Translations under genes and position numbers: made by a program
Notes under the pieces: generated by a model
What the model was told of the DNA's origin: nothing
Database searches by the model: none
Seen by the model: the letters and a program-made list of their open reading frames with translations, nothing else
Shown: one piece after another, positions 9,682 to 58,149 of the stretch
How the letters are laid out: each line of letters opens with the position of its first letter
Position numbering within the stretch: position 1 is the first letter of the stretch
Virus record (IMG/VR): IMGVR_UViG_3300020122_000238
Location: 1-64,000 of that record
Direction: 5' to 3' (one strand)
DNA: 64,000 nt

Positions 9682-10116
9682 GTGAAGCCTCTGGCGTCTT
9701 TCTACGATCACCCTCGTACGAAATTGGGGGTGGGAGTCAACTGCAAGCAGTGCATCAGTGAGAAAGGCCGAGGAACATACGATCCTCAAAAAGGACGCGA
9801 TAGTTACCAGAGGCGCCGGACGAGTATTCTTCTTCGGGTGAAGAATACTCGTGATACTCGTAAACACGAGTACATAACTCTCCTCGGAGGGCGGTGTAGA
9901 GATTGTGGGATTGCCCCTGGTAGTGAGTGGCCTATTGACGTGTTCGATTTCCATCATCTTGGAGTAGAAGACAAGGATATGGAGATAGGTCACATGCTTT
10001 CAAAAAAGAACCAAGAACAAGTTCGAGCTGAAGTTCTGAAGTGTGTTTTGCTGTGTGCAACCTGTCATCGACGCAGACACGCATGGCCAAATTTCTCCCA
10101 ACTGGAGTCTAAATGA
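9682..10116 (+). CDS. HNH endonuclease (homing-type); start uncertain
   Basis: CRDC...FDFHH...CVLLCATCHRRRH; N-terminal KPLASFY...CKQC knuckle; lower GC than its neighbours. Confidence 0.8.
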   Translation: MKPLASFYDHPRTKLGVGVNCKQCISEKGRGTYDPQKGRDSYQRRRTSILLRVKNTRDTRKHEYITLLGGRCRDCGIAPGSEWPIDVFDFHHLGVEDKDMEIGHMLSKKNQEQVRAEVLKCVLLCATCHRRRHAWPNFSQLESK

Positions 10117-11429
10117 CGACTGCGACGACCACGAAAGACAAGAAGGCCAAGGCTCCTGTTTCCTCTGCATCGGCAGTGGCGACCCTTGCCAGGGCCATGA
10201 TCCTCAAGACCACCAAGCAGCGGCCGATGACGGCCCAGCAAACGACTCTACCTCACGTTCCTTCGGGTTCGGTCATTCTCGACACGAGCATCGGGGGTTC
10301 GCGAACGGCAGATGGGAAGGGCTTCGTTTGCCCCGGTTACCCCCGGCGTCGCATCACGGAAATCTACGGTCCGGAGTCGAGTGGCAAGACGACGGTGGCT
10401 CTCACGGCCATCGCGAACGTCCAGAAGAATGGGGGGACGGCGATGTTTCTGGACTTCGAGCACGCCCTTCACCACGGCTACGCGAAGCAGATTGGGGTCC
10501 AGTTCGAAGACCTCCTTCTCTACGCTCCCGACACGATGGAAGATGGCTTCAAGATGATTCTTGTCGGCATCATGGCTGGCGTGGATATCATCGTCGTCGA
10601 CTCGGTCGCCTCGATGGTTCCTGCTCTGGAGTTGGAGAAGAAGATCGAGGACACCGCCAAGATCGGTGCGGTGGCGAAGAAGATGAGTGAGACCCTACCC
10701 AAGCTTGTCTTGTGGCTTGCCAAGTACCCGACGAAGGGGGCAGGGGAGAGCAAGATCTCTGACCCCGAGCGTCTCGGGACGGCCCTTATCCTGCTCAACC
10801 AGGAGCGAGCCACCATCAGCACGGGTGGTGGTCATGGTGCTCCTGAAGCCAACACGGCTGGAGGAAAGGCTCTCAAGTACTTCGCCTACGTTCGGCTGCG
10901 TCTCGCTCGGATTCTCTCCGAGCGTGTCGAGCGGAAGGACCCCGCCACGGGGAAGATCAAGAAGTATCCCTTTGGCAACCTCACCTCCGTGAAGGTCATC
11001 AAGGCAAAGGCCGACGCAAAGCAGGGACACGAAGCTACGATCTTCATTCGCTACGGCTTCGGGATCGACGACCTCTACAGCATCATCATGGCGGCTGAGG
11101 CCAACGGGATCATCAAGCGTGAGGGCTCGAAGTACACCTGTGCAGGCGAGTCCTTCATGGGGAAGGACAAGCTGCGCGCACACTTGATCGCCAACCCCAA
11201 GCTCGCAGCGGAGATCAAGGGGAAGGTTGTCGAGGCCATCTCTTCGGCAATCCCGACGGCGATCCCGGACGAGGATATCTCGGATGAGGACGCGATGCAG
11301 GCGGACCTCAGTGGCGAGCTGGGGGACGACGATGATGATGCGTCTGGGGGTGGGACGCAGGAAATCACGATCGACACTGACGATCCGATCATGGAAGATT
11401 CGGCCGAGGACGAGTCCGGCGGCGAATGA
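10113..11429 (+). CDS. recA: RecA recombinase
   Basis: EIYGPESSGKTT, DFEHAL, VVDSVA, LLNQER, GGKALKYFA; acidic tail. Confidence 0.95.
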   Translation: MTTATTTKDKKAKAPVSSASAVATLARAMILKTTKQRPMTAQQTTLPHVPSGSVILDTSIGGSRTADGKGFVCPGYPRRRITEIYGPESSGKTTVALTAIANVQKNGGTAMFLDFEHALHHGYAKQIGVQFEDLLLYAPDTMEDGFKMILVGIMAGVDIIVVDSVASMVPALELEKKIEDTAKIGAVAKKMSETLPKLVLWLAKYPTKGAGESKISDPERLGTALILLNQERATISTGGGHGAPEANTAGGKALKYFAYVRLRLARILSERVERKDPATGKIKKYPFGNLTSVKVIKAKADAKQGHEATIFIRYGFGIDDLYSIIMAAEANGIIKREGSKYTCAGESFMGKDKLRAHLIANPKLAAEIKGKVVEAISSAIPTAIPDEDISDEDAMQADLSGELGDDDDDASGGGTQEITIDTDDPIMEDSAEDESGGE

Positions 11430-12649
11430 TCTCGGTCGAGGTCTGCAACTTTCAATCGATTGAGCGTGTTTCATTCCAGATTGACGGCTTCACAGCTCTT
11501 GTGGGCCGGTCGAACATCGGGAAGAGCGCGCTCATTCGAGCGATTCGTTGTGCTCTCACTGGAGCGCCCGTGGCGGCATTCGTCCGTCACGGGCGCTCTT
11601 GCGCCCGCAAGCTGAAGAAGCAGAAGACGTGCAAGTGCCATGTTTCTGTGCATCTCCAGTCTGTGGACTTCGATCTCCTTTGGGAGAAGGGCGATTCGAT
11701 CAATCGTTACGTCTTCAATGGAGCGGAGTATCCCGCCGCCGAACGAGGGATGCCGGACTTCCTGATTGCGACCTTCAACGAGGTCAAAGTGGGGGACAAG
11801 AACGTCCTCCTTCAGGTCTCCGATCAATTCAACCCCATCTTCCTTCTCGACCAATCCCCTGGTGTGGTCGCGGATGTCCTCTCGGACATGGCCAAGCTCG
11901 ATCAGGTCAATCTCGCCATGCGGATGGTCGAGAAGGACAGGAGGGAGGCTACGGCTACACGGAAGGTCAGGGAGAAGGACGTTATCGAGGCTACGGCCCA
12001 GCTTGCGTCGTATGACGGGCTCGACACAGCTCTTCGAGACGTCAAGACCGTCAAGACGAAGCTGGGGGTTGTCCAGGCGACTCAAGCCAAGGTCACACAG
12101 CTCGACTACTTCATTGACGGGCGAGCTGCTCTCGAATCGCGGGTGGCGAGTCTTGAGGGTGTGGTTGCTCAGGCACCCCCAAATCCAACGGAGCTACAGG
12201 AAGGTCAGAAGACCTTCTCTCTTCTCCAGAGGCTATGTCTCCAGAACGCCACCCGAAGGGCATCCCTGGCTTCTCTCGATGGGGTGAGCAAGATCGAGAT
12301 CCCGAGTGTGACGGATCTTCGGACCTTCGCGGAGGTCACCTTTCAGCTCCTCGAAGGGTGGATCACCCGCCTTCGAGGGTTCAAGGAGAGCATGGGTCGT
12401 CTCAAGGATGTAAAAACCCTTGAGATGCCTTCCCTTGCTTCGGTTCATGCCGCGCACAAAAAACACGAAAACCTGATCGACTTCGCGGGGGATTACGAGG
12501 TGACTCTTCGTAATATCGCCACTTTGGAACGGGGGTGCAGCCTCGTCTATCTGGAAGAAGAGGTCCTCAATCGGGAGTGGGCTGAGCTGGGTGTTTGTTC
12601 GACCTGTTCCCGTCCTTTTCATTCCGATTCTCATCTCGAACAGGTGTAG
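11426..12649 (+). CDS. sbcC: Rad50/SbcC-like ATPase, N-terminal half
   Basis: NFQS, Walker A GRSNIGKS, Q-loop-like SDQF, coiled coil, C-terminal CSTC zinc hook; no Walker B. Confidence 0.85.
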   Translation: MISVEVCNFQSIERVSFQIDGFTALVGRSNIGKSALIRAIRCALTGAPVAAFVRHGRSCARKLKKQKTCKCHVSVHLQSVDFDLLWEKGDSINRYVFNGAEYPAAERGMPDFLIATFNEVKVGDKNVLLQVSDQFNPIFLLDQSPGVVADVLSDMAKLDQVNLAMRMVEKDRREATATRKVREKDVIEATAQLASYDGLDTALRDVKTVKTKLGVVQATQAKVTQLDYFIDGRAALESRVASLEGVVAQAPPNPTELQEGQKTFSLLQRLCLQNATRRASLASLDGVSKIEIPSVTDLRTFAEVTFQLLEGWITRLRGFKESMGRLKDVKTLEMPSLASVHAAHKKHENLIDFAGDYEVTLRNIATLERGCSLVYLEEEVLNREWAELGVCSTCSRPFHSDSHLEQV

Positions 12650-12660
12650 AGTGAGTGTGG

Positions 12661-13641
12661 ATGCCTCGACTATCCTTCCTTTTTAGGACCGACACCCACG
12701 TAGCGGATCGGAGCCCCGCGTCTTGGAAAGCAGACTACCCGTCGGAGATTTGGTCGAATCTCGAACAAATCGGGCAATTCGCGAAGAAGTTCGAGGTGAC
12801 GGCTGTACTCGACGGGGGGGACTTCTTTCACGTCAAGGCCGCAAGTCGGAATCCACATGGCCTGGTTGAGCGAGCTGCTCGGATCCATCAGGCCTACCCA
12901 TGCCCTGTGTGGTCCGTCGAGGGGAATCACGACATTGCCTACAACAACCTGGACACCCTGGCGAAGCAACCTCTCGGTGTGCTCCTAGCAACGGGGGTCT
13001 TCCACCATCTTCGAGAGCAGGTCTTTGAGGATGGTGGGGTTCGAGTACGGGTGGTGGGGGTTCCCTACAGCCCCCATCGAACCGTGGCGGAGCTGAAGAG
13101 GATCAAGAAGAAGCCGGGGGACGACTTCCTCATCGCTGTCGTTCACGCCCTCGCAGCTCAGGAACCACCCCCCAACGTCGAGGGCTTCTTCGGTGAGCCT
13201 GTCTTCCGGTACGGCGACCTCGTGACCGAGGATGGCCCGGATTCTTGGTGCTTCGGGCACTGGCACAAGGACCAGGGGATCGTGACCGTGGGGGGCAAGC
13301 AGTTCGTCAACCAAGGGGCTGTGAGCCGAGGGGCTCTCGTTAGAGAGAACACCTTGAGGACCCCCCAGGTGTCTCACATCGTGATCGAAAACGGTGTGCT
13401 TCGGATCTGGCCTGTCCCGCTGATCGTTGCCCCGGCGGAGGATGTCTTTGACATCGAACGCAAGGAACGAGAAGAGGCCGAAGACACGGCGATCGATGCC
13501 TTTGCAGCTCGTATCAAGGCCGACGCGATGTTCGATCCCTCCTTGGGGATCGAAGAATCACTGAATAGTCTTGACTATGCCCGTGATGTGCGTGATCTCG
13601 CACAGGGCTACTTGGAACGAGCGCGGGCGGAGGTTGGCTGA
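12661..13641 (+). CDS. sbcD: Mre11/SbcD-like metallophosphoesterase nuclease
   Basis: DTH, GGDFF, GNHD, GHWH motifs; adjacent to sbcC. Confidence 0.88.
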   Translation: MPRLSFLFRTDTHVADRSPASWKADYPSEIWSNLEQIGQFAKKFEVTAVLDGGDFFHVKAASRNPHGLVERAARIHQAYPCPVWSVEGNHDIAYNNLDTLAKQPLGVLLATGVFHHLREQVFEDGGVRVRVVGVPYSPHRTVAELKRIKKKPGDDFLIAVVHALAAQEPPPNVEGFFGEPVFRYGDLVTEDGPDSWCFGHWHKDQGIVTVGGKQFVNQGAVSRGALVRENTLRTPQVSHIVIENGVLRIWPVPLIVAPAEDVFDIERKEREEAEDTAIDAFAARIKADAMFDPSLGIEESLNSLDYARDVRDLAQGYLERARAEVG

Positions 13642-14546
13642 TGTATCTGTCGTATTCTGGGTTCAAATCGTACGACTCCTGTCCCAAGGCGTACTGGTAT
13701 CGCTACGTGGGCAAGACACCTCTCTCCGAACCGGAGAACAAGGTCAACTCCATCTACGGCAGCACGGTGGGCCGGCTCTTCGAGCTGTTCTACGCCAACC
13801 AGATCTGGAAGCAGTCGAACACAATCGAGACTCTTTTGGGGATGGTCGAGCCCGAGCTAGACGACACCATTCAGAAAGAGCGCCGGAACGGGGTCATCGA
13901 CTACACGGACAAGAGGTCGAACTACGCATCTCGGGATGCCCTGGTTGCGGACATCCGAGCGGCTATTCCCCGAGGGATTGCCATCATCAGGCACCACCGG
14001 CTGATCGGTGCTGATGCAGCGGCGGAGGTCAAGTACGACACGATGATCGAGGGGCACACGATTGGGGGTCGTGCTGATTTCGTTCTTCGTAGGGTTGCCC
14101 CCCACCGGGACCGAGTTCTACTCGATGGGAAGGGATCCCGGCATCGGGAGAAATACGTCGATGATCGCCAGCTCGTGTGGTACGCGATGCTTCATCGAAT
14201 TCGTCATGGATCTCCCCCCGATCGTTTGGGGTTCGTCTTCTGGCGGTATGAACCGGAGGAGAGTCTGGATTGGATCAACTTCACCGCGGCGGACCTCGAC
14301 GGGCTCCTTGCCCATGTCCTCAGCACGGTGCGGAAGATTGATGGGGGTATCAACACCCTCATCTCGGGGAGCAAGGAAGTCCAGAAACAAGTGATGGGGG
14401 ATGTGTTCCAGGCTCAACCTGGACAGGGCAAGTGCAAGCTCTGCTCCTATCTCGCAATCTGCCCTGAAGGCCAGAGCTTCACAGCGAAACATCAGATCCC
14501 CGTCTACGCTGGAGAGGGTGTAGAAGACGTGGGCATCGGGGATTGA
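13641..14546 (+). CDS. PD-(D/E)xK Cas4/RecB-like exonuclease
   Basis: LSYS...CPK, GRAD, LDGK, QLxWY, C-terminal CxxC-x5-C (Fe-S-type Cys set). Confidence 0.85.
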   Translation: MYLSYSGFKSYDSCPKAYWYRYVGKTPLSEPENKVNSIYGSTVGRLFELFYANQIWKQSNTIETLLGMVEPELDDTIQKERRNGVIDYTDKRSNYASRDALVADIRAAIPRGIAIIRHHRLIGADAAAEVKYDTMIEGHTIGGRADFVLRRVAPHRDRVLLDGKGSRHREKYVDDRQLVWYAMLHRIRHGSPPDRLGFVFWRYEPEESLDWINFTAADLDGLLAHVLSTVRKIDGGINTLISGSKEVQKQVMGDVFQAQPGQGKCKLCSYLAICPEGQSFTAKHQIPVYAGEGVEDVGIGD

Positions 14547-14556
14547 AAGGACACGT

Positions 14557-14829
14557 ATGACTCCTGACGAGATCAAGAAGAAGATCGAGGACCTATCGAG
14601 GCGAACCGAAGTCGTCTCGAAGAAGAAGTCGCAGTACGAGGGGCAGCTCCAGAAGGTCAAGGAAGACCTCGCGGATCTGGTCACCGAGGTGAAGGCTGCG
14701 GGCTACGACCCCAAGACTCTCTCCGCCGAGAGGGACAAGGCGGAGGCAAGTCTCCTTCAGGAGATTGCCGAGTACGAGACCAAGTTGCTGGCCGTGGAGA
14801 CTTCCTTGGCCGGCTACGACAAGAAGTAA
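14557..14829 (+). CDS. Small coiled-coil protein
   Basis: 90 aa heptad-rich, AGGA RBS. Confidence 0.75.
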   Translation: MTPDEIKKKIEDLSRRTEVVSKKKSQYEGQLQKVKEDLADLVTEVKAAGYDPKTLSAERDKAEASLLQEIAEYETKLLAVETSLAGYDKK

Positions 14830-14851
14830 CGACTCCCAAAATGAGGATGGA

Positions 14852-16132
14852 ATGAAAATCACGCTCAAGCTCGCCGACCTGATCAAGGCCCTCGCCATCG
14901 TTTCGATCGTCCCCCCGCGTCCCCTGACCCCGGCGGGCGGGGCCGGCTACCTCTTCGTCATCCGAATGGGAGGCCTCTGCTCGATCTACTCCCGCGACGC
15001 TCTTCACGTTGCTCGCGCCACGATCTCCTGTGATGAGAAGGAGACCGAGGGGTCCTTCATCTTCCCCTCGGAGTTCACGAGTGGTTTCCGTTTCCTTCGG
15101 GATGACGACATCACGATCGAGTCCAAGGTGGACTCGGACAACTTCACGGTTTCCTGGAGCACGAACTCGGGAGCTGGGGCGGATCGCGCGAGCTTCGATC
15201 CGAAGCTCATGGCCTCGTGTGATCGGGATCTCGCCGGAGCCAAGGATGAACGCTCCTTCCCCGTGGGCCTATTCAAGGAGGCGATGACGCTGGCCAAGCC
15301 CTTCCTTGGGAAGGCCGACGACACGCGGATCCCGGAGCACTTCAAGACGCTCCAGCTCTTCGACAAGTCCAAGCCCGAGTGGGAGAAGGGTTCCGGGCAT
15401 CTCTTCGCTGCGAACACCTTCCAGGCGTTCTGGTTCTACAGCGCTGCCTTTGTCGACAAGGGGTTCTCGATCCACGTCCAGCACATGTCCTTCTTCACAA
15501 GCTTCCTCGCGAAGTCGGATGGAGAGGTGAAGCTCCTGACGGGCGACAACATGATCTTCGCCGTCGACTCCAAGGGGAACGCGCTCGGGTGGGCGAAGCA
15601 CGAGTCCGTTCACGGGAAGTTCTCCTACTACTCGAAGGCGATGGACAAGCTCATCCTCGGGCTCCCCAAGTCGCTGACGGTGGACGCGCTCCGCTTCATG
15701 CGCTCAGAGCTGGATTCCAAGGAAGACAAGATCACTCTGGTCGTCAACGAGTTCCGTGACGTCGAGGTGGGCGAGAAGGTGCAACGCCAAGCAACGATGC
15801 TCTTCCGAGTGGCCGAGACGAAGGGCAAGGCTCGGAGCTTCCCGCTCCCGGCTGTCGTCATCGACGGCTCCGAGGAGCAAGAGATCACCTTCAACGTCAA
15901 CATCGACCGGCTCATCGACCTCATCGACGGCGTGAAGGGCATGGACGTCCAGCTTCGGATCGCGGTCATCAAGGCCGACGACAAGTCCCCCAAGGAACGG
16001 GCCATGTTCCGCACTATCGACGAGTTCCTCATGGACGACAACGGCAAGGTGGTCGGGGACATCACGGCGGAAAACCGGCCGGAAGGGTCGCACGAGTGCC
16101 GCGTAACCAGGTACATGCCCTCGAAGGACTGA
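14852..16132 (+). CDS. dnaN: DNA polymerase sliding clamp (beta-clamp-like)
   Basis: N-terminus MKITLKLADLIKALAIV resembles DnaN; about 430 aa; ends RYMP; dnaX nearby. Confidence 0.6.
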   Translation: MKITLKLADLIKALAIVSIVPPRPLTPAGGAGYLFVIRMGGLCSIYSRDALHVARATISCDEKETEGSFIFPSEFTSGFRFLRDDDITIESKVDSDNFTVSWSTNSGAGADRASFDPKLMASCDRDLAGAKDERSFPVGLFKEAMTLAKPFLGKADDTRIPEHFKTLQLFDKSKPEWEKGSGHLFAANTFQAFWFYSAAFVDKGFSIHVQHMSFFTSFLAKSDGEVKLLTGDNMIFAVDSKGNALGWAKHESVHGKFSYYSKAMDKLILGLPKSLTVDALRFMRSELDSKEDKITLVVNEFRDVEVGEKVQRQATMLFRVAETKGKARSFPLPAVVIDGSEEQEITFNVNIDRLIDLIDGVKGMDVQLRIAVIKADDKSPKERAMFRTIDEFLMDDNGKVVGDITAENRPEGSHECRVTRYMPSKD

Positions 16133-16134
16133 CC

Positions 16135-16371
16135 ATGCTTGTACGACCTAAATTGTGGCTTGAGGCGGAACGCATTACGACTGCGAAACAAGCGTCAAAA
16201 GTCACGATTCTTCCCCAAGTCATTGGCCCGCGGGGTTGGTCTGGTTTTGTTGGGGACTGGATCATCACGGCTCCGAATGGGGATACTTTCATTCGCCCAG
16301 ATGCCACTTTTGCAAAGGACTACGAGGTCAAGCATTGGTGGGATTTGTTGACCAAGGTGTGGGGGTTCTAG
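16135..16371 (+). CDS. Small phage protein (GDWII...F..DYE family)
   Basis: Motif VGDWIITAPNGDTFIRPDATFAKDYE is typical of a common small phage protein family. Confidence 0.65.
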   Translation: MLVRPKLWLEAERITTAKQASKVTILPQVIGPRGWSGFVGDWIITAPNGDTFIRPDATFAKDYEVKHWWDLLTKVWGF

Positions 16372-16375
16372 AAGC

Positions 16376-17035
16376 ATGAAAGACTGGGCTGCGAGGACTG
16401 AAGCTCTCGCATTGAAAGCAGCTCGTCTCCAGGCCCTCCGCGATCAAAAGCGGGCGGATCTGGAGTCGAAAAGCGCGGAAGTGACGGCTCTCTCGGCCCA
16501 GATCGAGAAGCTCTTCAAGGTGGGGGAGCTTCTCCGCATCCTTTTGGACAAGCTCGTCACGGACAGGGTTCGGACCCTGGAGGCTCTTGTCTCTGAGGGT
16601 CTGAAGACCATCTTCTTCGATCAGAAGCTCTCGTTCGAGGCAGCGATCGGACAGGCTCGGAACAGGGTCTCCATCGACTTCTTCATTCGTCAGGGAGACG
16701 AAGAGGCCGGCGTTCGTGGGCATCCCCTTGATTCTTTTGGGGGTGGTCCTGCGAGTATCGTTTCCTTGATTCTCCGTCTCCTTCTACTCCTCCGCTTGAA
16801 GCGGTTCCCCGTGCTCCTACTCGACGAGACGCTTGCGGCAGTCTCGGATGAGTACGTGGATGCAGCCGGACGTTTCCTTCAACGTCTCGCGGAATCGACC
16901 AACATCGACATTTTGTTTGTCACCCATAAGCAAGCCTTCCTCGAACACGCGAACATCGCGTACCAAGGATCTGAAGAGCTGGGTGCGGATGAGACGACGT
17001 GGCTAGACATTCGCCGCCTTCGGAGTCATCGGTGA
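16376..17035 (+). CDS. Rad50/SbcC-like ATPase, C-terminal half
   Basis: Short coiled coil, signature SFGGG, Walker B/D-loop LLLDETLAAVS, H-loop FVTH; no Walker A. Confidence 0.85.
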   Translation: MKDWAARTEALALKAARLQALRDQKRADLESKSAEVTALSAQIEKLFKVGELLRILLDKLVTDRVRTLEALVSEGLKTIFFDQKLSFEAAIGQARNRVSIDFFIRQGDEEAGVRGHPLDSFGGGPASIVSLILRLLLLLRLKRFPVLLLDETLAAVSDEYVDAAGRFLQRLAESTNIDILFVTHKQAFLEHANIAYQGSEELGADETTWLDIRRLRSHR

Positions 17036-17589
17036 GAACGCAATCTGAAATCATCGGTCGCATTCGTTTCCTGCTTGTGAAGGAGCTGGAGGATCGTGTG
17101 ACGGCTGCCAGGGAGAGGTTGCCCCACCGCTGCATGTACAACTACAGGCAACCCCTCGATGTTCGTCGAACTATCGACGACGAGCCCAACCCGAACTACA
17201 ACCGAATCACGATGGGGTCTGGGCTTGGGGGGCGCCACCTTCCCGTCCTTCAGACCATCGGTCTCTGCATGTACGGGGTCGAGGACATCATCTCCGCCGA
17301 GATCCGGATCTGTGAGGATCCCTCGGATGCACAGCAGTGTCCCTTGTTCGAGCCCACCCTCAACAAGCACCAGTTGTGGACGGAGTACGCGGAACAGATC
17401 GATAGTCCTGATTGGTTGCGAGAGAACATGCCCGAGGTTCACGGCCTCGCGTGGGCCCTGGGAGATGGAATGCCTCGGATCCCTTGGTGGGCACGTCTGT
17501 GGTTCCGCCTGACTCAGATTCGACCGGAGCCCATTCGAATCCCTACCGATCTCGTGAAGTACCTCCCGGACCCCAGCTCCCTGCAATGA
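17032..17589 (+). CDS. Hypothetical Cys-containing protein
   Basis: GTGA and ATGA overlaps at both ends. Confidence 0.65.
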   Translation: MRTQSEIIGRIRFLLVKELEDRVTAARERLPHRCMYNYRQPLDVRRTIDDEPNPNYNRITMGSGLGGRHLPVLQTIGLCMYGVEDIISAEIRICEDPSDAQQCPLFEPTLNKHQLWTEYAEQIDSPDWLRENMPEVHGLAWALGDGMPRIPWWARLWFRLTQIRPEPIRIPTDLVKYLPDPSSLQ

Positions 17590-18185
17590 GCTTCTCAATC
17601 CTGGAGCAAGTGCTGGTTGTCGACCGGCATCGACAGAGGGCTTCAGGTAAGCAGGGGTTCTCTACCCCCTACCTGTGCACTGCGAAGGTGATCCCCAGCT
17701 CGGTCCCATTGGTGGTCACCAATGCCCGGGGTGGCTTTGTTGGCACAAGGCCTTCCAAGGATGGGGACGCGAGGTATGGCTTCTCCCTCCTCTCAGAGGA
17801 AGGCGATCCTGATGTGCTCGTCCTTGCACTCTATCGGGATGTCCGGGGTCTTTCGACTCAGGGCAACTGGGGGAATCGGTGTAGCTCGGTCCTCGTGGCC
17901 ATGGAGCGTCTCCGAAAATCAGGACTCGAACCGAAGTCCCTCATTCTCTCCTCGGCCCTCCTCAAGGAGGTCTGCGGGGAGAAGGCGGCGTCGGTGAAGG
18001 GTGGATTCGTGACGACCCTGGAGGGCGGTCTCCAGGTCTTCGTTGCAGCTCTTCCGGATGGAGCAGCTCTTGTGCTTCCTTCGCCTGAAAAACTAGGGTT
18101 CTACACGCGAGTGCGTGATTACGTGGGGGTCATGATTCGGCGAGCTGACCAGACGATCATGGTGGTCGGCCGTGACCTGGCTTGA
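17586..18185 (+). CDS. Hypothetical protein with a weak MCP-like C-terminus
   Basis: ATGA overlap; C-terminal half aligns by eye with the MCP at 45652. Confidence 0.55.
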   Translation: MSFSILEQVLVVDRHRQRASGKQGFSTPYLCTAKVIPSSVPLVVTNARGGFVGTRPSKDGDARYGFSLLSEEGDPDVLVLALYRDVRGLSTQGNWGNRCSSVLVAMERLRKSGLEPKSLILSSALLKEVCGEKAASVKGGFVTTLEGGLQVFVAALPDGAALVLPSPEKLGFYTRVRDYVGVMIRRADQTIMVVGRDLA

Positions 18186-18897
18186 CGATTTTGTCGTTGA
18201 ATCTGGAGCTGAACTACCCGACCGTGTCAGGGAATCCTTGTGGGGTCGGGGAGTTACAGACGAGCAGATCAAGCAATTTCAAATTGGGTACATCGACCGG
18301 GTTTTACCAGCGATCAACTACCCCCAAGACTTCGTGTCTTGGTCGGGGGATGGGGGGAAGCTTGACGACTGCTACGTTCTTCCGATTACGAACACCATCG
18401 GTGAGCTTCGAGGCCTCCAATTTCGGCACGTCGAGAGGGAGCGTGGGGGCTACATGGACTTCATTCTCGCTCAGGATGAAGCTGTGGGGTTCGGGCTCGC
18501 TCAGGCAATGCCTACAGTGTGGGAGTCTGGGGAGATCCTTCTGGTAGAAGGCGGGTTCGACCTTCTACCCCTCCAGCGGTTCCTTCCCGGGATTGCTTCA
18601 ACGCTGACTGCTCGGGTCACCGAGGGATTTGTTCGGATCCTACGACGTCTTGTACGCCGCGTGTGGATCGGATATGATATGGATTCGGCCGGAAATAGGG
18701 CGTACGACAGGTTTCGCCAACAGTACGGCCGGGAATTCGATGTTCGTCGGGTAGTTTACCCCCGGGTCACTATGGTCGGCGGTAAGCTGGTCAAGGATCC
18801 TGGAGACCTCTGGGAGGCCTGGGGAGATGCCCGACTTGGTGAGTACCTCCGATCTCATGTGAGGTCGGGTAGCCTGATGGAGTTTCCCTATGGGTAA
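18172..18897 (+). CDS. dnaG: DnaG-type primase (catalytic core/TOPRIM, no zinc-binding domain)
   Basis: RG...FQIGY, VLPI, LVEGGFD, GYDMDSAG, KDPGD. Confidence 0.8.
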   Translation: MTWLDDFVVESGAELPDRVRESLWGRGVTDEQIKQFQIGYIDRVLPAINYPQDFVSWSGDGGKLDDCYVLPITNTIGELRGLQFRHVERERGGYMDFILAQDEAVGFGLAQAMPTVWESGEILLVEGGFDLLPLQRFLPGIASTLTARVTEGFVRILRRLVRRVWIGYDMDSAGNRAYDRFRQQYGREFDVRRVVYPRVTMVGGKLVKDPGDLWEAWGDARLGEYLRSHVRSGSLMEFPYG

Positions 18898-19381
18898 GAT
18901 TTACAGTGTGAGTGAGACGGTCGCAACCATTGCGAAGAACCTGATCCCCGGGTATCACCCGGAGCTGGCCACCGCACGGCTAAAGTACGCCTTCGTGGAC
19001 AAGGGTTCGACGAAGTCTGGCCGTCCCGTCCTCGGCAAGGCACGGAAGCTATCGGGCATCTCGCAGTTCTTCATCGACTGCGACTTCATCATCGAGGTCG
19101 CCGAGGACACCTGGAACGAGCTGACGGAGAACAAGCGAACGGCTCTCATCGATCACCTCCTGGAGCACTGTACGGGGGAGGAAGACGACAAGACCGGGGA
19201 CATGGTCTGGGTTCTCCGTACGCCGGACGTCGAGGAGTTCACCTCGATTCTCCGTCGGCACGGTGCCTGGAACGAGACCCTCACGGCGTTCGCGAGCGTC
19301 GCCAAGGCTATCGAGATCGAAGACATGGTGGACGACATCGTGATGTCGTCCTCCGAAGGGGAGTCCGCTCCGGCGCACTGA
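18890..19381 (+). CDS. Phage putative metallopeptidase-family protein
   Basis: LGKA, DFIIE...W...ALIDHLLEHC, PDVEEF..I.RRHG pattern. Confidence 0.7.
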   Translation: MGKIYSVSETVATIAKNLIPGYHPELATARLKYAFVDKGSTKSGRPVLGKARKLSGISQFFIDCDFIIEVAEDTWNELTENKRTALIDHLLEHCTGEEDDKTGDMVWVLRTPDVEEFTSILRRHGAWNETLTAFASVAKAIEIEDMVDDIVMSSSEGESAPAH

Positions 19382-19387
19382 AAACCT

Positions 19388-19618
19388 GTGTGGGACACCA
19401 ACATCATGAACATCACCCGTGCCGGACGGAAGCTGCCGTCCGGCAGCTCTCTCTTGGCGCGAGCCCCTCATTTGACTCAGGAGTGGAGTCCTGAGAAGAA
19501 CCGAGGGATCCAGCCGGAAGACGTTCATGGTGGTTCCCCATTCGAGGTGCGGTGGGACTGTACGGACATTCCTGGTTGTTTTCGAGAATGTCTCCGTTCA
19601 ATCTCAAGGGAAGTCTAA
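19388..19618 (+). pseudogene. Truncated treble-clef/zinc-ribbon domain (homing-endonuclease remnant)
   Basis: SLL..P.L..EWSPEKN..I.P.DV..GS...V.W.C repeat unit, then the frame degenerates. Confidence 0.6.
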
Positions 19619-21083: not shown

Positions 21084-23060
21084 ATGGCATCACGCCAAAT
21101 CAAACCTGTCATTGACCTCACAAAGCCTTCGGAGTGGGTTGCTCTTGAGCTTGGGCCCAAGGCGGATGGTGAAGACCCGGATCTCATTAAGCAGTCCATT
21201 CGTCACCACCTCCGAGACGCGGACGTGTTCATTCCAGCGTCCGTCACTCAGGTGGGCGGGGACAGGGTCATTCAGTACCTCCTCGAAGGGTATGCTTTCA
21301 TTCGGCGGGCTCATGCTGAGGAGAAGTACTACCGGCTCGAAGGGAGCAAGTACGTTCAGGGGGTCATCAGCCACGTCGACCGAAGTCGCTTTCGGTCGAC
21401 ACGCCGGATTGCGTACGTCCCGGATCATGAGGTCTCCAGGCTACGACGGCAGATCGAGGCACAGGAGAACCAGGGGATCGAGGTGGGGGACCTCGTGCTC
21501 ATCCTATCGGGGCCTTACCGGCTGATCAAGGCGAAGGTCATCGAGGACATTCCAGAAAAGGACGAGGTCCAAGTTTACATTCAGCTCCGCTCCAAGGAGT
21601 CTCTCATCACCTTCCCCCGAGCTGGGCTCAGGCTTGTCGCGAAGGGGGAGAAGAATTTTCTGACCTACCAGACCCGATGGATGACCCTTCAGCAATGGGG
21701 AGAGGCTGCTTTCCCTGTCATGCAGTGGTCCTCGGATGGTTTTGATGGGATCCTTGATGGGCTGGCGTCCTACACAATGCTCGATGTGTGGACCACCAAA
21801 GAGCGGACTCTTCTCGATCAAGACTTGGTCGCTGGTTACGCGCTCGATTTCGACCCCCTTCGGTTGGAGCTACTCTGGGGGGAGCACGCCAAGCTATCGA
21901 CGTGGATTTCGGCGGGGCAGAAGCAGGTGAACTTCCTTCGAGCGATGTCTTCGACTCCTTCCACGGAGCATTTGCTTCAGCTTGGTGAAGAGGTCCAACG
22001 TCTCTCTAGATGGACTACGGCCGTCAACCAGTTGGTGACGGCCGTCCGAGCCTTCAACATAACCCCCTCTCTCACTCCCATCGAATCGCGGTATCTCGAA
22101 TTGGAGTGGCTCCAGGACATTCAGCTCCGGTTGAAGGCCTTGAGCGACAAGTTGACGGACATAGAAGACGATGTGGAAGACCCTGCAATGACCCAAAATC
22201 TCATCATCGACGGCAACAATCTCGCGGTTCGCTGTGGGCGGGCTCCTGGACTCGATCAGCTCAAGGATAAGCAGGGGCGTCCTTCTGGAGTGGTGACGGG
22301 GTTCCTTCGGAGCCTGGGGGCTCTTCGCAAGAGGTTCCCCAAGGCCACCATCTACGTTTGCTGGGACTACTCCTCGCAGCGTCGTATGAGCACCTTCCCC
22401 GGGTACAAGGCGGGGAGGACTCCCTTCGAGGGACGCGACCAGATCGAGTGGCTGAAGGCAGCCCTACCGTCTTTTGGGGTCGTCCAGGCCTACAACGAGG
22501 TGGAAGAGGCCGACGATGCCATCGCGACTCTCGTCTCGGGTCGCCTCAAGGAGGATGTGAACGTCATCCTCTCGAACGACCGGGATCTTCTCCAGCTCGT
22601 GACTGCAACGACGACTGTCCTCGCTCCTTCGAGTGGTCTCCGCCCCGAGAAGCTCTTCGATGTCGATGCCGTGAAGGAGGAATACGGGGTTCCTCCGGGC
22701 AAGATGGTCTACTTCCGGGCCATGTCGGGAGACAGCTCGGACAAGATTCCTGGTGTTTTCAGGCTCCAGGAGAAGACCATCGTGCATTTGATCCGTACAT
22801 ACGGATCCATTGATGGCGTTTTTTCATCTTCTCTGCCAGAGTTGACGAAATCTCAGCAAGAGAAGATTCGTGCCTCTGAGGCACAGGTCAGGAAGAACGT
22901 GGGGCTCATGGCCCTCGTCTCGAACCTGGACCTTACTTTCGTCCACCCGATGACGAACCCGGAGGCAGCCTCGAAGCACCTCCAAGATGTTGATGTGAAG
23001 GTCGAGCCGATGTTGACGGCGTTCTTCCGTCTGGCGGAGTCCCCTACGAATACAACGTAG
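21084..23060 (+). CDS. NusG-like (NGN+KOW) domain fused to a PolA-type 5'-3' exonuclease
   Basis: VFIP, EGYAFI, VGDLVLILSGPY (KOW); from 22188 IIDGNN, YKAGR, EADD, SNDRDLLQL, GDSSDKIPGV. Confidence 0.85.
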   Translation: MASRQIKPVIDLTKPSEWVALELGPKADGEDPDLIKQSIRHHLRDADVFIPASVTQVGGDRVIQYLLEGYAFIRRAHAEEKYYRLEGSKYVQGVISHVDRSRFRSTRRIAYVPDHEVSRLRRQIEAQENQGIEVGDLVLILSGPYRLIKAKVIEDIPEKDEVQVYIQLRSKESLITFPRAGLRLVAKGEKNFLTYQTRWMTLQQWGEAAFPVMQWSSDGFDGILDGLASYTMLDVWTTKERTLLDQDLVAGYALDFDPLRLELLWGEHAKLSTWISAGQKQVNFLRAMSSTPSTEHLLQLGEEVQRLSRWTTAVNQLVTAVRAFNITPSLTPIESRYLELEWLQDIQLRLKALSDKLTDIEDDVEDPAMTQNLIIDGNNLAVRCGRAPGLDQLKDKQGRPSGVVTGFLRSLGALRKRFPKATIYVCWDYSSQRRMSTFPGYKAGRTPFEGRDQIEWLKAALPSFGVVQAYNEVEEADDAIATLVSGRLKEDVNVILSNDRDLLQLVTATTTVLAPSSGLRPEKLFDVDAVKEEYGVPPGKMVYFRAMSGDSSDKIPGVFRLQEKTIVHLIRTYGSIDGVFSSSLPELTKSQQEKIRASEAQVRKNVGLMALVSNLDLTFVHPMTNPEAASKHLQDVDVKVEPMLTAFFRLAESPTNTT

Positions 23061-23071
23061 GCGGAAGGAAA

Positions 23072-23782
23072 ATGATGTCGACTGGATACGTGATTTCGGT
23101 AGACCCGGCTACTTTGGCCAACCGCTTTCCTTCTGGTCGAGGGAACGAGGAGGAAGACCTCCTCCTCGATCGTCTCCAGATTCTTGAGGACACGGCTGCG
23201 GGCCTCATTCAAGAAGAGGATGACGATGATCCCATTGCAGAGTTCCTCTACTCGGGGGACTACGAAGATCGTCTGGCTCCGCTTCTAGATCGCATCCCCA
23301 AAAGGGAAGCCGATCTCATCTACCTCTACTACATTCAGAAGAAGCGTCAGGCGGATATCGCCGAGATCTTCGACGTCACCCAAGCCGCCATCTCCTATCG
23401 TCTCGATCGGGGTCTTCAGAGGATCAAGTTCCTCCTGTCGATCCCCCAAGTCACTGAGACCGAGCTTCGGCGCGACCTTCCCCTCATTCAAGATGGTCAT
23501 CTCAAGCCTGCGTTCAAGGCCATCGATGTGGACATCTTGGTGGGGATGTGGTCGACGACCTGTCAGAGCGAAGTGGCGATGCGACTCGGCTTGACTCAGG
23601 GTCGAGTCCGGCATCGGTTCTTCAAGGCGGTGAAGCTTCTTGGTGAGGCCTCGGGGAAGGATGGTCGCTTCCTTCGCTATCACAAGGTCTTCGCTGCCAT
23701 TTCGAACAAGAAGTTCAACATCCTCCGTGAGGTGAAGCTCCCCCAGTGGGCGGACCGGGGAGGCGATGCTCTTGACGGGTAG
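23072..23782 (+). CDS. Sigma-70 region-4-like protein with two HTH motifs
   Basis: READLIYLYY...QADIAEIFDVTQAAISYR and QSEVAMRLGLTQGRVRHR. Confidence 0.75.
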   Translation: MMSTGYVISVDPATLANRFPSGRGNEEEDLLLDRLQILEDTAAGLIQEEDDDDPIAEFLYSGDYEDRLAPLLDRIPKREADLIYLYYIQKKRQADIAEIFDVTQAAISYRLDRGLQRIKFLLSIPQVTETELRRDLPLIQDGHLKPAFKAIDVDILVGMWSTTCQSEVAMRLGLTQGRVRHRFFKAVKLLGEASGKDGRFLRYHKVFAAISNKKFNILREVKLPQWADRGGDALDG

Positions 23783-45651: not shown

Positions 45652-46533
45652 ATGAACAACCAGGTTTCCAACGAGCTGAAGCAGCAAATCATCAGCGAGT
45701 ACATCAAGACGGCCGCCGGCCGTGCAAAGCTCGCTGCGTCGATGATCCAGCCCCTTCGGCTGCGTCGTGACTACACCGCGGTCGGTCGCAAGACCTTCCT
45801 CGTCGAGCAGCTACCGGATGGAGCGTTGCCGATCTATGACAAGGACCCCGACGTCACGGCCTTCGTGGTCGGCGAGGAGGGTCAGAACATCCTCGCGATC
45901 CAGAAGCCGCGTCGGGTCATCTTCCCGCTGTTTGAGATCGCCTCGAACCCCGAGATCCCGCTCACGCAGATCAAGGAGCGTCGCTTCGACCTCATCGAGC
46001 GTTCGCAGGACCTCGCGAAGGCCCAGATCCAGGCCGCCGAAGATGAGCGCGTCTTCACGGTTCTCGACTCGATCGCCGTTTCCGGCTTCGACACCCTCCC
46101 CGGGCAGTCGAACCCTGACGTCGCGGTGGTGGCCCCCATCTCTCCGGCCGTCCTCGCGGACGCGTTCGCCGAGATCGAGCGTCACGACCTTCGGGTTGCC
46201 CGGATCTACATGAACGCGGTCGACTACGCGGACATCCGCAAGTTCGGCCGTGACATCCTGGACATCGAGAGCCAGGCCACCCTCCTCAAGACTGGCCTCC
46301 AGGCCGTCCTCTGGGGTGCGCAGATCATCACGTCGAGGCTCGTCCCCGTCGGGTTCGTCTACATCTGCGCGGAGCCCGAGAACTTCGGTCGCTTCCCGGT
46401 CCGCACGGAGCTGACGGTCCTCTCGGCCGACGATCCCAAGGCCCGCACGATCGGCTTCTCGTGTTTTGAGAACGTCGGCATTGGTGCCTTCAACCCCAAG
46501 GCACTCACTCGGGTGGTTGTGCAGCGTTTCTAG
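45652..46533 (+). CDS. Major capsid protein (HK97 fold)
   Basis: GAGG RBS, strong codon bias, follows protease-scaffold-decoration; IYMN...LWGAQI A-domain pattern, ends ENVGIGAFNPKA; followed by a terminator. Confidence 0.85.
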   Translation: MNNQVSNELKQQIISEYIKTAAGRAKLAASMIQPLRLRRDYTAVGRKTFLVEQLPDGALPIYDKDPDVTAFVVGEEGQNILAIQKPRRVIFPLFEIASNPEIPLTQIKERRFDLIERSQDLAKAQIQAAEDERVFTVLDSIAVSGFDTLPGQSNPDVAVVAPISPAVLADAFAEIERHDLRVARIYMNAVDYADIRKFGRDILDIESQATLLKTGLQAVLWGAQIITSRLVPVGFVYICAEPENFGRFPVRTELTVLSADDPKARTIGFSCFENVGIGAFNPKALTRVVVQRF

Positions 46534-57240: not shown

Positions 57241-58149
57241 ATGGCATACGATCTAAATCACATCTTCACGTACCACCGTCCCACTGCGGATCAGCTCCCG
57301 AAGTACGAGATGATCCGAGATGCAGCGAAGACTTTCGCCTCGGTCGTTCTCGCGTGTACTCCCGCTGGGGAGGACCAGACGACGGCCATTCGGCACATCA
57401 GGGATGCGGTCATGACCGCCAACGCGGCCATCGCTTTGAAGGGCGTCCTGACCAAGGGTGAGACCTTGCTGAAGGCTCTGTCTAGCAAGGTCTATGCGTC
57501 CATCGAGCGGGATGATGTCCGTGTTGCTCGGCTCTACATCAACAACGAAGAGTACGTGACTCTCCGAACGGAGTGCTTGGCATCGTTCGATAGGACGTCC
57601 AACCGAGCAATCATTGAGGCAGGCATCATGGGGAGTCTGTTGGGCGCTCAGGTATACATCTCCGAAGCTGTTCCTCCGGGCTTCGCTTGTGGATTTGCGG
57701 ACGACGCCGACTTTCCCACCCTTGTGATCACTCCGGAGCTGATCCAGACGAAGCTCGTGAACCTCTGCGACTATGGGGATGCGGTTTCGGTATACCCCCG
57801 GCCGGATGCTGTGGCCCGAAAAGCGGCTGTGATGAAGGCCTACGCGGAGAGGGTCTTCGCTTCCCATGGGGCTGCGGGCAATAAGGTCGAGCACATCTAC
57901 ATGAACGCGTACGAGTATGCGGACATCCGCAAGTTCGGACACGATGTCCTGGAGATCGAAAGCCAAGCTATCATCCTCCGCAAGGGGATCATGGGGGTCT
58001 TCCACGGCGCACAGGTCCACGTCTCGCGGGAGGTTCCTCGCGGACAGGTGGCTGTTTTCGCGACGGGGGACGTGATCCCTGAGAAGGTCTCGGAGATGAA
58101 GTTCTTCACGCTGATGTACCCCGAGGAGCAGGGGTCGGCAGCGGTGTAG
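57241..58149 (+). CDS. Acb2/Tad1-like domain fused to two MCP-derived domains
   Basis: N-terminal FTYHxP...Q...Y..IR...AVMTANAAIA hairpin; two repeats similar to the MCP (20/25 identical in the best block); AGGAG RBS. Confidence 0.8.
   Translation: MAYDLNHIFTYHRPTADQLPKYEMIRDAAKTFASVVLACTPAGEDQTTAIRHIRDAVMTANAAIALKGVLTKGETLLKALSSKVYASIERDDVRVARLYINNEEYVTLRTECLASFDRTSNRAIIEAGIMGSLLGAQVYISEAVPPGFACGFADDADFPTLVITPELIQTKLVNLCDYGDAVSVYPRPDAVARKAAVMKAYAERVFASHGAAGNKVEHIYMNAYEYADIRKFGHDVLEIESQAIILRKGIMGVFHGAQVHVSREVPRGQVAVFATGDVIPEKVSEMKFFTLMYPEEQGSAAV

What the first reader, a model, noticed from the sequence alone, without database searches (positions are those of the whole stretch)
17586..18185. 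Possible second, degenerate MCP-fold paralogue inside the replication operon
Seen: AMERLRKSGLEPKSLILSS...LEGGLQVFVAALPDGAALVLPSPEKLGFYTRV..VGVMI aligns by eye with MCP AFAEIERHDLRVARIYMNA...LWGAQIITSRLVPVGFVYICAEPENFGRFPVR...VGIGA. The gene is translationally coupled among early/middle genes, just before the primase. Inference: an HK97-fold fragment expressed before true MCP could be a decoy or an exapted capsid fold. With 57241 this would make a small family of non-structural capsid mimics. Identity is low, so this is tentative.
Basis: inference. Interest (0 to 1): 0.6.

Follow-up and report, generated by a model that had tools for sequence, protein, structure and literature searches.

The report
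Mini capsid-fold protein beside the primase
A 199-residue gene beside the primase of a giant soil phage is confidently predicted to have the HK97 capsid-protein fold, although it lies far from the head genes, which suggests a capsid protein reused for a non-capsid job.

Summary
ORF 17586-18185 is a real gene under purifying selection (dN/dS 0.135). It overlaps the upstream 4-Cys gene by 4 nt and the downstream Toprim primase gene by 14 nt.

No shuffle out of 150 reached that score. The MCP is the best non-self hit among 65 other ORFs in the window.

An AlphaFold2 model built on 106 homologues (pLDDT 95, pTM 0.91) finds only HK97-fold capsid or encapsulin chains in the top 50 of an exhaustive search of 48,161 chains (Z up to 11.5). 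Bacillus phage G gp27, a relative of this phage's MCP, ranks second among viral models.

The protein is not a fragment: the matches span both the P and A domains, but there is no N-arm. It founds an unannotated family (181 clusters at 50% identity, all about 200 aa). The family always sits between the 4-Cys protein and the primase in megaphage replication operons.

Function is inferred only. The likeliest role is an exapted, non-virion, non-enzymatic accessory of the replication phase, possibly a primase adaptor. The decoy idea is untested. ORF 57241 is a separate, younger MCP derivative, not the same family.

The parts
17586..18185 (+). Gene for a 199-aa miniaturised HK97-fold protein, founder of an unannotated family of about 200-aa proteins
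   Evidence: ORF and translation. 181 representative clusters at E<=1e-3, all about 200 aa. AF2 pLDDT 95.2, pTM 0.91. All top-50 fold matches are HK97-fold, Z up to 11.5. dN/dS 0.135. No Pfam, PHROG, NCBIfam or PADLOC family.
16999..17589 (+). Upstream partner gene: 196-aa protein with four invariant cysteines (C45, C90, C105, C114). Probably a metal- or cluster-binding protein. Its stop overlaps the target's ATG.
   Evidence: Alignment of 8 orthologues. Always directly upstream of the target. In Tunturiibacter phage Tunturi_5 its homologue gp21 directly abuts the primase. The AF2 model is poor (pLDDT 64), so the fold is unknown.
18172..18897 (+). Downstream partner gene: 241-aa Toprim (DnaG-type catalytic core) primase without a zinc-ribbon domain. 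Its start overlaps the target's last 14 nt.
   Evidence: Toprim_2 1.5e-6, phrog_47 4.5e-14, TIGR01391 positions 244-358. No PF01807 zinc ribbon anywhere in the 275-kb record.
45652..46533 (+). The true major capsid protein (293 aa, phage-G gp27 type): comparator and presumed parent lineage
   Evidence: phrog_2522 6e-52 and Pfam Phage_capsid. More than 2000 relatives at 85-95% identity. 39% identical to phage G gp27. Best hhalign hit of the target family in the window.
10113..19381 (+). The tightly packed replication/recombination gene run that holds the target. Order: RecA, SbcC N-half, SbcD, PD-(D/E)XK nuclease, 90-aa coiled coil, sliding clamp, SbcC C-half-like ATPase, 4-Cys protein, target, primase, PF18894 metallopeptidase.
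   Evidence: Pfam and PHROG hits. The same order is found in 9 contigs down to 28% target identity.

Best explanation
Shown here: ORF 17586-18185 is a functional gene. Its 199-aa product is predicted with high confidence to have a miniaturised HK97 (capsid-protein) fold. The structural matches span the P-domain and A-domain core, but the roughly 60-residue N-terminal arm region of the phage's own 293-aa MCP is absent. It is an old, strongly diverged offshoot most likely of the phage-G-type MCP lineage. It is fixed as a single-copy gene between a 4-Cys protein and a zinc-ribbon-less Toprim primase in the replication/recombination operon of a clade of soil and sediment megaphages.

Inferred: it is not a shell subunit of the virion. 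It is an exapted capsid fold made with the replication proteins and acts as a non-enzymatic protein-binding module.

My most specific guess is an adaptor or scaffold of a split primase unit (4-Cys protein, this protein, Toprim core). Such an adaptor could replace contacts that a one-piece DnaG makes through its own zinc-binding or helicase-binding domains.

Rough odds:
- HK97 fold and homology to capsid proteins: about 0.9.
- Non-virion, replication-phase role: about 0.5.
- Primase adaptor specifically: about 0.25.
For: Fold:
- AF2 on 106 homologues gives pLDDT 95.2, pTM 0.91.
- The Foldseek PDB top 50 are all HK97-fold MCPs or encapsulins.
- VIA-align gives Z 11.5-9.0 with 145-156 of 199 residues at 2.9-4.1 A, covering model 1-198 against HK97 128-383.
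- An exhaustive search of 48,161 chains, independent of Foldseek, gives a top 50 made only of HK97-fold capsid, encapsulin and GTA chains.
- ESM Atlas neighbours are all MCP clusters, TM by query 0.58-0.65.
- BFVD rank 2 is phage G gp27 (E 3.1e-7, TM 0.58).

No shuffle out of 150 reached the score. The MCP ranks first of 65 ORFs.

Real gene: dN/dS 0.135 against a 91%-identical relative. 181 clusters of constant length.

Core gene of the replication module: identical gene order in 9 contigs, with overlapping starts and stops.

Not behaving like a shell subunit:
- It lies 28 kb from the head module (protease, Q-rich protein, decoration-position ORF, MCP).
- The MCP is 100% identical in two relatives where the target is 91%.
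- Its divergence tracks that of the sliding clamp, another non-enzymatic binder. Target: 91, 52, 46, 35, 29, 28%. Clamp: 98, 72, 47, 42, 32, 28%.

Primase context: the Toprim protein has only the catalytic core. The record has no DnaG zinc ribbon, and the DnaB-type helicase is encoded 124 kb away. The upstream protein has four invariant Cys.
Against: - No direct evidence of function, binding partner, expression time or absence from virions. No RNA runs hold this phage.
- The operon mixes functions. For example, the clamp lies between the two SbcC halves, and a metallopeptidase lies between primase and clamp loader. Adjacency is therefore weak evidence for a primase link.
- In Tunturiibacter phage Tunturi_5 (MCP 48% identical) the 4-Cys homologue directly abuts the primase with nothing between them, and the family profile finds nothing in that genome. 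The primase pair can therefore exist without this protein.
- The target has the highest dN of 15 module genes and is the most diverged in most comparisons. This would also fit a host-interaction gene.
- Family pI is near neutral (median 6.6), so there is no sign of general DNA binding.
- The structure is predicted, not solved.
Confidence: 0.5

Rival explanations
1. Anti-defence decoy or inhibitor. An early-made capsid look-alike binds host immune sensors that recognise HK97-fold capsid proteins (CapRel-type, Lit/Gol-type, or capsid-triggered CBASS/Pycsar, known from the literature). It blocks or titrates them before the real MCP appears.
For: HK97 fold with the exposed core kept. Position in an operon of replication genes, presumed early or middle. 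Highest dN of the module and fastest divergence. The same genome carries another MCP-derived ORF fused to an Acb2/Tad1 hairpin, a domain known from anti-CBASS and anti-Thoeris sponges.
Against: It is a fixed, single-copy, syntenic core gene across contigs whose clamp loaders are only about 50% identical. Known anti-defence genes are usually patchy. dN/dS of 0.135 shows plain purifying selection. Its divergence is only slightly faster than that of the clamp. An early capsid mimic would be expected to trigger abortive-infection sensors rather than silence them. There is no PADLOC or PHROG link.
Confidence: 0.15
2. A minor structural or assembly protein of the head that merely happens to be encoded outside the head module. 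Examples would be a vertex-type or capsid-modulating paralogue like T4 gp24 or the satellite Ccm protein.
For: Every characterised HK97-fold protein assembles into shells or co-assembles with one (review PMC11664910). The closest viral models are MCPs, including phage G gp27.
Against: It lacks the N-arm (matches start at HK97 residue about 128). At 199 aa it is shorter than every HK97-fold chain in the match lists (236-584 aa). It lies 28 kb from the head genes inside replication genes in all 9 contigs. It diverges while the MCP stays 100% identical. It is absent from the syntenic slot of Tunturi_5 and not found in phage G, whose capsid is built of gp27 and gp26.
Confidence: 0.12
3. It self-assembles into its own small shell or ring (a phage 'mini-encapsulin') that encloses or organises replication proteins.
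For: HK97-fold proteins with P and A domains are shell formers. Encapsulins are among the best matches (Z 11.5, M. xanthus EncA).
Against: It has no N-helix or N-arm, and no neighbouring gene stands out as encapsulin-type cargo. No shell-sized relatives are known. Nothing here shows self-association.
Confidence: 0.06
4. The resemblance is not homology: either a prediction artefact or a convergent alpha/beta arrangement.
For: Sequence identity to any capsid protein is 7-16% in the structural alignments. Foldseek global TM is only 0.3-0.45 on PDB chains. HMMER finds no capsid family.
Against: pLDDT is 95 from a deep natural alignment. All 50 of the top 50 in an exhaustive search are HK97-fold. 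Profile-level similarity to its own MCP, in the register expected from the fold, lies far outside the shuffle null. The two MCP-like ORFs of the window rank first and second of 65.
Confidence: 0.05

Closest known systems
HK97-type major capsid proteins of tailed phages (Pfam clan CL0373; HK97 gp5, Bacillus phage G gp27)
   Same: Same predicted fold over the whole protein (Z 9-11, about 150 residues aligned). Phage G gp27 is the second-best viral model. There is residual profile similarity to the phage's own MCP over the C-terminal 80 residues.
   Different: 199 aa against 280-580 aa. No N-arm. No Pfam or PHROG capsid hit in any of 106 members. Encoded in the replication operon rather than the head module. 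Diverges much faster than the MCP.
Encapsulin shell proteins, Families 1-3
   Same: HK97 fold with both P and A domains. M. xanthus EncA is the top match (Z 11.5, 156 residues, 3.7 A).
   Different: It is a phage protein, not a cellular one. It has no N-helix (matches start at encapsulin residue 26-29). There is no cargo enzyme or targeting-peptide context, and the neighbours are a 4-Cys protein and a primase. It is 60-80 residues shorter.
Family 4 'A-domain' encapsulins (heavily truncated HK97 fold, dimeric, not shell-forming; PMC11664910)
   Same: A precedent for a shortened HK97-derived protein that sits in an operon with enzymes and apparently does not build shells.
   Different: Family 4 keeps only the A-domain. 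Here the matches span the P-domain and A-domain core. Family 4 is found in Euryarchaeota and Bacteroidota rather than phages. No Pfam hit links the two.
Capsid-protein paralogues with special roles (T4 gp24 vertex protein; satellite capsid-redirecting MCP homologues such as SaPIbov5 Ccm, from my own knowledge)
   Same: A second HK97-fold gene beside the main MCP in one genome. T4 gp24 is among the matches (Z 7.5).
   Different: Those paralogues are full-length, recognisably similar in sequence to the MCP, encoded with morphogenesis genes, and enter the shell. None of this holds here.

Membership tests
HK97-fold major capsid protein | HK97 fold: P-domain sheet with spine helix plus A-domain | tested here: met
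   AF2 pLDDT 95. Z up to 11.5 over model residues 1-198. All top 50 of 48,161 chains are HK97-fold. Atlas TM is 0.58-0.65.
HK97-fold major capsid protein | N-arm (and scaffold or delta-domain link) at the N-terminus | tested here: not met
   Model residue 1 aligns at HK97 residue 127-130 and at encapsulin residue 26-29. Profile alignment places target 101 opposite MCP 167, so the target is about 66 residues shorter before that point.
HK97-fold major capsid protein | Extended E-loop | tested here: inconclusive
   Strands 11-15 and 30-34 with a conserved 14-residue connection lie where the E-loop comes in the chain order. Coordinates could not be inspected, so its geometry is unknown.
HK97-fold major capsid protein | Sequence membership in a capsid family (Pfam Phage_capsid and clan, PHROG major head) | tested here: not met
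   No capsid family hit for the protein or any of 106 members at E<=1. There is no PDB sequence hit with the profile. Only a sub-threshold hhalign link was found.
HK97-fold major capsid protein | Encoded in the head-morphogenesis module | tested here: not met
   It lies between a 4-Cys protein and the primase in all 9 contigs. The head module with the true MCP is at 42-46.5 kb.
HK97-fold major capsid protein | Assembles into capsomers and shells; present in virions | not testable with these tools
   This needs purification, electron microscopy or virion proteomics. The one complex job gave no verdict and is not evidence either way.
Encapsulin (Families 1-3) | Cellular shell protein with an adjacent cargo enzyme carrying a targeting peptide or domain | tested here: not met
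   The genome is a phage genome. The neighbours are replication proteins with no cargo-type family.
Encapsulin Family 4 (A-domain only) | Only the A-domain retained | tested here: not met
   Matches span both domains of HK97 (128-383) and whole encapsulins. The Family 4 definition comes from PMC11664910.
DnaG-type primase accessory domains (zinc-binding or helicase-binding domain) | Fold or sequence of the DnaG zinc ribbon or C-terminal helicase-binding domain | tested here: not met
   No such family hit. No primase chain appears among the top 50 fold matches. A role with the primase would be a new one, not membership.

The most novel reading that the evidence does not exclude
This would be the first HK97 capsid fold recruited into DNA replication. 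The mini-HK97 protein would be an obligatory subunit of a three-gene primase cassette (4-Cys protein, HK97-fold adaptor, Toprim core) in a clade of megaphages. Alternatively, it would build a small replication-phase assembly. Either way the HK97 fold would gain a function outside capsids and encapsulins.
Probability: 0.25. Interest if true: 0.8.

Novelty: new variant of a known kind. Interest (0 to 1): 0.62.

Why it matters
The HK97 fold is the most widespread capsid fold. So far it is known only from virus shells and encapsulin compartments; a 2024 review calls encapsulins the only non-viral assemblies with this fold.

Here a 199-aa version is shorter than every HK97-fold match found. It is conserved in 181 sequence clusters and is locked into a replication operon. 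It would show that phages themselves reuse their capsid protein for another purpose, and it would define a near-minimal HK97 core.

The family has no annotation in Pfam, PHROGs or NCBIfam. Naming it would improve the annotation of many megaphage genomes. It would also remove a risk of calling a false second 'capsid gene' in structure-based annotation.

Tried and rejected
- Pairwise BLASTP of target against MCP gave only a 23-aa piece out of register (E 0.027), so it is not evidence.
- Pfam, PHROGs, NCBIfam and PADLOC on the protein, Pfam on all 106 members, and the family profile against PDB sequences: no family.
- The word-index search found only family members, with no names.
- tblastn against 50,697 phage records found no match.
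The single protein gave two relatives at 91% identity.
- Self-association of four copies: 'no answer' (score 0.02).
- AF2 of the upstream 4-Cys protein on 8 sequences was poor (pLDDT 64, the Cys-bearing core under 50), so it was not searched. The protein-atlas feature search for it gave only an unnamed viral cluster at 0.77.
- The atlas feature search for the target gave weak leads only, with capsid-fragment clusters at 0.81-0.82.
- RNA evidence: no RNA run holds the region, and DNA runs from soil, sediment and mat hold only small shares.
- Promoter and terminator scan: counts at chance level.
- Searching the records behind L006, L008 and L014 for the MCP failed because those records are not held.
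- The family profile found nothing in LR745208.1, Tunturi_5 or phage G by whole-record search. A local look then showed a faint syntenic candidate in LR745208.1 and an empty slot in Tunturi_5.
- Four literature searches found no description of such a protein.
- No other genetic code was used.

Full report
**1. What is at the coordinates**

The window is bases 1-64000 of a 275.3-kb IMG/VR virus record, estimated 58% complete. ORF 17586-18185 (+) starts with ATG and encodes 199 aa. Its ATG overlaps the TGA of the upstream ORF 16999-17589. Its last 14 nt overlap the GTG start of ORF 18172-18897.

That downstream ORF is a DnaG-type Toprim catalytic core of 241 aa (Toprim_2 1.5e-6; phrog_47 4.5e-14; TIGR01391 positions 244-358).

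The gene sits in a closely packed run of + strand genes, in this order:
- RecA/UvsX
- an SbcC-like N-terminal half
- SbcD
- a PD-(D/E)XK nuclease
- a 90-aa coiled coil
- a sliding clamp
- an SMC-head C-terminal-half ATPase
- a 196-aa protein
- the target
- primase
- a PF18894 metallopeptidase
- clamp loader
- a NusG-like/flap-endonuclease fusion
- a sigma factor

Upstream lie an NAD-ligase and a RecD2 helicase.

The comparator 45652-46533 is the true major capsid protein (phrog_2522 6e-52). It is preceded by a head-maturation protease, a Q-rich protein, and an ORF in the position of phage G's decoration protein gp26.

**2. Is the by-eye alignment real?**

BLASTP of the two proteins finds only an unrelated 23-aa piece. 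The exhaustive HMMER search found 181 representative clusters (50% identity level) at E<=1e-3, and all listed hits are about 200 aa or shorter. I aligned 106 full-length members as A1.

- Against a low-diversity profile of 121 MCP sequences the score is 34.9, E 3e-4, probability 39%.
- 150 shuffles of the MCP gave mean 13.8, sd 2.4, maximum 21.0. The reversed MCP gave 11.3.
- Run against all 66 + strand ORFs of 150 aa or more in the window, the best non-self hit is the MCP. The second is ORF 57241-58149, the only other MCP-like ORF.

The similarity is weak but well beyond chance.

**3. Fold**

AlphaFold2 on A1 gave pLDDT 95.2 and pTM 0.91, with all five models at 94 or above.

- Foldseek against the PDB returned only HK97-fold capsid and encapsulin chains in its top 50. 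The best was HK97 prohead II (E 1.5e-4, probability 0.98), but global TM scores were low at 0.3-0.45.
- Re-alignment with VIA-align gave Z 11.5 for M. xanthus EncA (156 residues, 3.7 A) and Z 11.1 for HK97 prohead (148-151 residues, 3.2-3.4 A). 151 chains reached Z>=8. The matches span model residues 1-198 against HK97 128-383.
- The search that does not depend on Foldseek, over 48,161 representative chains, again gave a top 50 made only of HK97-fold capsid, encapsulin and gene-transfer-agent chains (Z 10.0-7.1).
- In the ESM Atlas the nearest clusters are all MCPs of 281-485 aa (TM by query 0.58-0.65).
- In BFVD the two best are the MCP of Achromobacter phage Motura (1.2e-7) and gp27 of Bacillus phage G (3.1e-7, TM 0.58). 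Phage G gp27 is the cultured relative of this phage's own MCP, at 39% identity.

The protein has the HK97 fold, and the matches span both the P-domain and A-domain parts.

It is not a fragment, but it is reduced. Nothing is left to form an N-arm or N-helix, because the matches begin at HK97 residue about 128 and at encapsulin residue 26-29. At 199 aa it is shorter than every chain in the match lists.

**4. The family and its context**

No member hits any Pfam family. The protein has no PHROG, NCBIfam or PADLOC family and no named relative.

Seven diverse members were traced to contigs, and two 91%-identical relatives were found in IMG/VR. In all nine the order is clamp, ATPase of about 225 aa, 4-Cys protein of 176-200 aa, target, Toprim primase, PF18894 metallopeptidase, clamp loader. 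Starts and stops mostly overlap or abut. The genome holds one copy.

Against a 91%-identical relative, dN/dS is 0.135. This shows purifying selection, so the gene is real. dN is nevertheless the highest of 15 module genes.

In deeper comparisons the target is the most diverged gene or ties for it, but it tracks the sliding clamp closely:
- Target: 91, 52, 46, 35, 29, 28%.
- Clamp: 98, 72, 47, 42, 32, 28%.

The MCP is 100% identical in the two close relatives.

The most conserved positions are R14, P28, P41, a near-invariant acidic position at about 75, G171 and R175. The best-conserved block is 171-181, in the C-terminal beta-hairpin. Family pI is near neutral, median 6.6.

**5. Range**

The MCP type links this phage to three records:
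- LR745208.1, an uncultured 485-kb phage (82% identical)
- Tunturiibacter phage Tunturi_5 (48% identical)
- Bacillus phage G (39% identical)

The family profile finds nothing in these records by whole-record search.

Looked at locally, LR745208.1 has a 180-aa ORF in the slot between its 4-Cys homologue and a 246-aa ORF in the primase's position. That ORF is the best hit of the family in the locus, though faint (hmmsearch E 0.0022; hhalign 25.4).

In Tunturi_5 the 4-Cys homologue gp21 (E 1.6e-10) directly abuts the annotated primase gp22, so the slot is empty.

The pairing of the 4-Cys protein and the primase is therefore older or wider than the target. The target is a lineage-specific but then stably kept addition, or else a loss in Tunturi_5.

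**6. How it most likely works**

Shown: the fold, the family, purifying selection, the fixed position, and the tight coupling to both neighbours.

Inferred from those:
- It is not a shell subunit. It has no N-arm, it is far from the head genes, and it diverges while the MCP stands still.
- It is made with the replication proteins.
- It is a non-enzymatic binder. It has no catalytic family, and its rate of change is clamp-like.

The primase here has only the catalytic core. The 275-kb record has no DnaG zinc ribbon, and the DnaB-type helicase lies 124 kb away. The upstream protein has four invariant cysteines.

I therefore favour a role as adaptor in a multi-part primase unit, at about 0.25. 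Tunturi_5's empty slot and the mixed nature of the operon speak against a strict requirement.

Rivals are an anti-defence decoy (0.15), a minor head or assembly protein (0.12), a shell of its own (0.06), and no homology at all (0.05).

**7. Comparison with what is known**

It works, as far as the fold goes, like an HK97-type capsid protein core. It fails the membership tests for MCPs (N-arm, sequence family, gene context), for encapsulins (cellular origin, cargo, N-helix), and for Family 4 A-domain encapsulins (it keeps the P-domain).

[quoted passage not shown] That is the nearest precedent for a reduced HK97 derivative placed in an operon with enzymes. Four full-text searches found no description of a capsid-fold protein in a phage replication module.

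**8.

That ORF (302 aa) has an Acb2/Tad1 hairpin domain at residues 10-65 (Pfam 3e-11, above the cut-off). It also has two tandem segments that are 34% and 49% identical to MCP residues 155-254. It is a recent, A-domain-only, duplicated derivative of the MCP.

The target's HMM does not find it, and hhalign gives only 25.2. The two are independent derivatives of the capsid gene in one genome, not one family.

**9. Verdict**

The HK97-fold reading is strongly supported by prediction and weakly but significantly by sequence. The functional reading remains inference.

I rate it a new variant of a known kind (a capsid fold in a new size class and genomic role), with interest 0.62.

Noticed in passing
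window 57241-58149 (+): This 302-aa ORF combines an N-terminal Acb2/Tad1 hairpin domain (Pfam PF24729, 3e-11, 43.8 bits against a cut-off of 27) with two tandem copies of an MCP A-domain-like segment. Segment 57475-57741 is 34% identical and 57802-58062 is 49% identical to MCP residues 155-254. The same ORF is present in two related records. A sponge-type anti-defence domain fused to capsid pieces deserves its own study.
   Followed up: partly
window 16999-17589 (+): This 196-aa protein has four invariant cysteines (C45, C90, C105, C114) and no known family. It is always next to the Toprim primase or one gene away, also in Tunturiibacter phage Tunturi_5 (gp21). The genome has no DnaG zinc ribbon, so this may be a detached metal-binding primase subunit. 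The AF2 model was poor.
   Followed up: partly
window 11426-12649 (+) and 16376-17035 (+): An SbcC/Rad50-like ATPase appears to be split into two genes. The N-terminal half (Walker A end; SMC_N profile positions 4-87) and the C-terminal half (SMC_N positions 53-208) are separated by SbcD, a PD-(D/E)XK nuclease, a 90-aa coiled-coil protein and the sliding clamp. The arrangement is conserved in relatives.
   Followed up: no
window 21084-23060 (+): This 658-aa protein joins a NusG/antiterminator-like N-terminal part (phrog_6386, residues 65-178) to a 5'-3' flap exonuclease (residues 354-619). A sigma factor gene follows at 23072-23782.
   Followed up: no
window 19420-19445 (+): A strong hairpin (10-bp stem with 8 G-C pairs) lies in the 145-nt gap between the metallopeptidase and the clamp-loader genes. 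It is the only sizeable gap in the operon, and the hairpin may be a terminator or attenuator.
   Followed up: no
whole window; MCP 45652-46533: The MCP is extremely conserved: more than 2000 relatives, the 120 best listed at 84-95% identity, on contigs up to 620 kb. It links this phage to a megaphage group that includes LR745208.1 (485 kb), Tunturiibacter phage Tunturi_5 (host is an acidobacterium from tundra soil) and, more distantly, Bacillus phage G. DNA runs with small shares of the region come from soil, sediment and microbial mats.
   Followed up: partly
own record G000:C1:93669-93785 (-), outside the window: A short stretch is 46% identical to MCP residues 32-72 and contains one in-frame TGA (E 1.8e-4). 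In the two related records an ORF elsewhere matches MCP residues 3-65 at 44% identity. These are further scattered capsid-gene pieces in these genomes.
   Followed up: no
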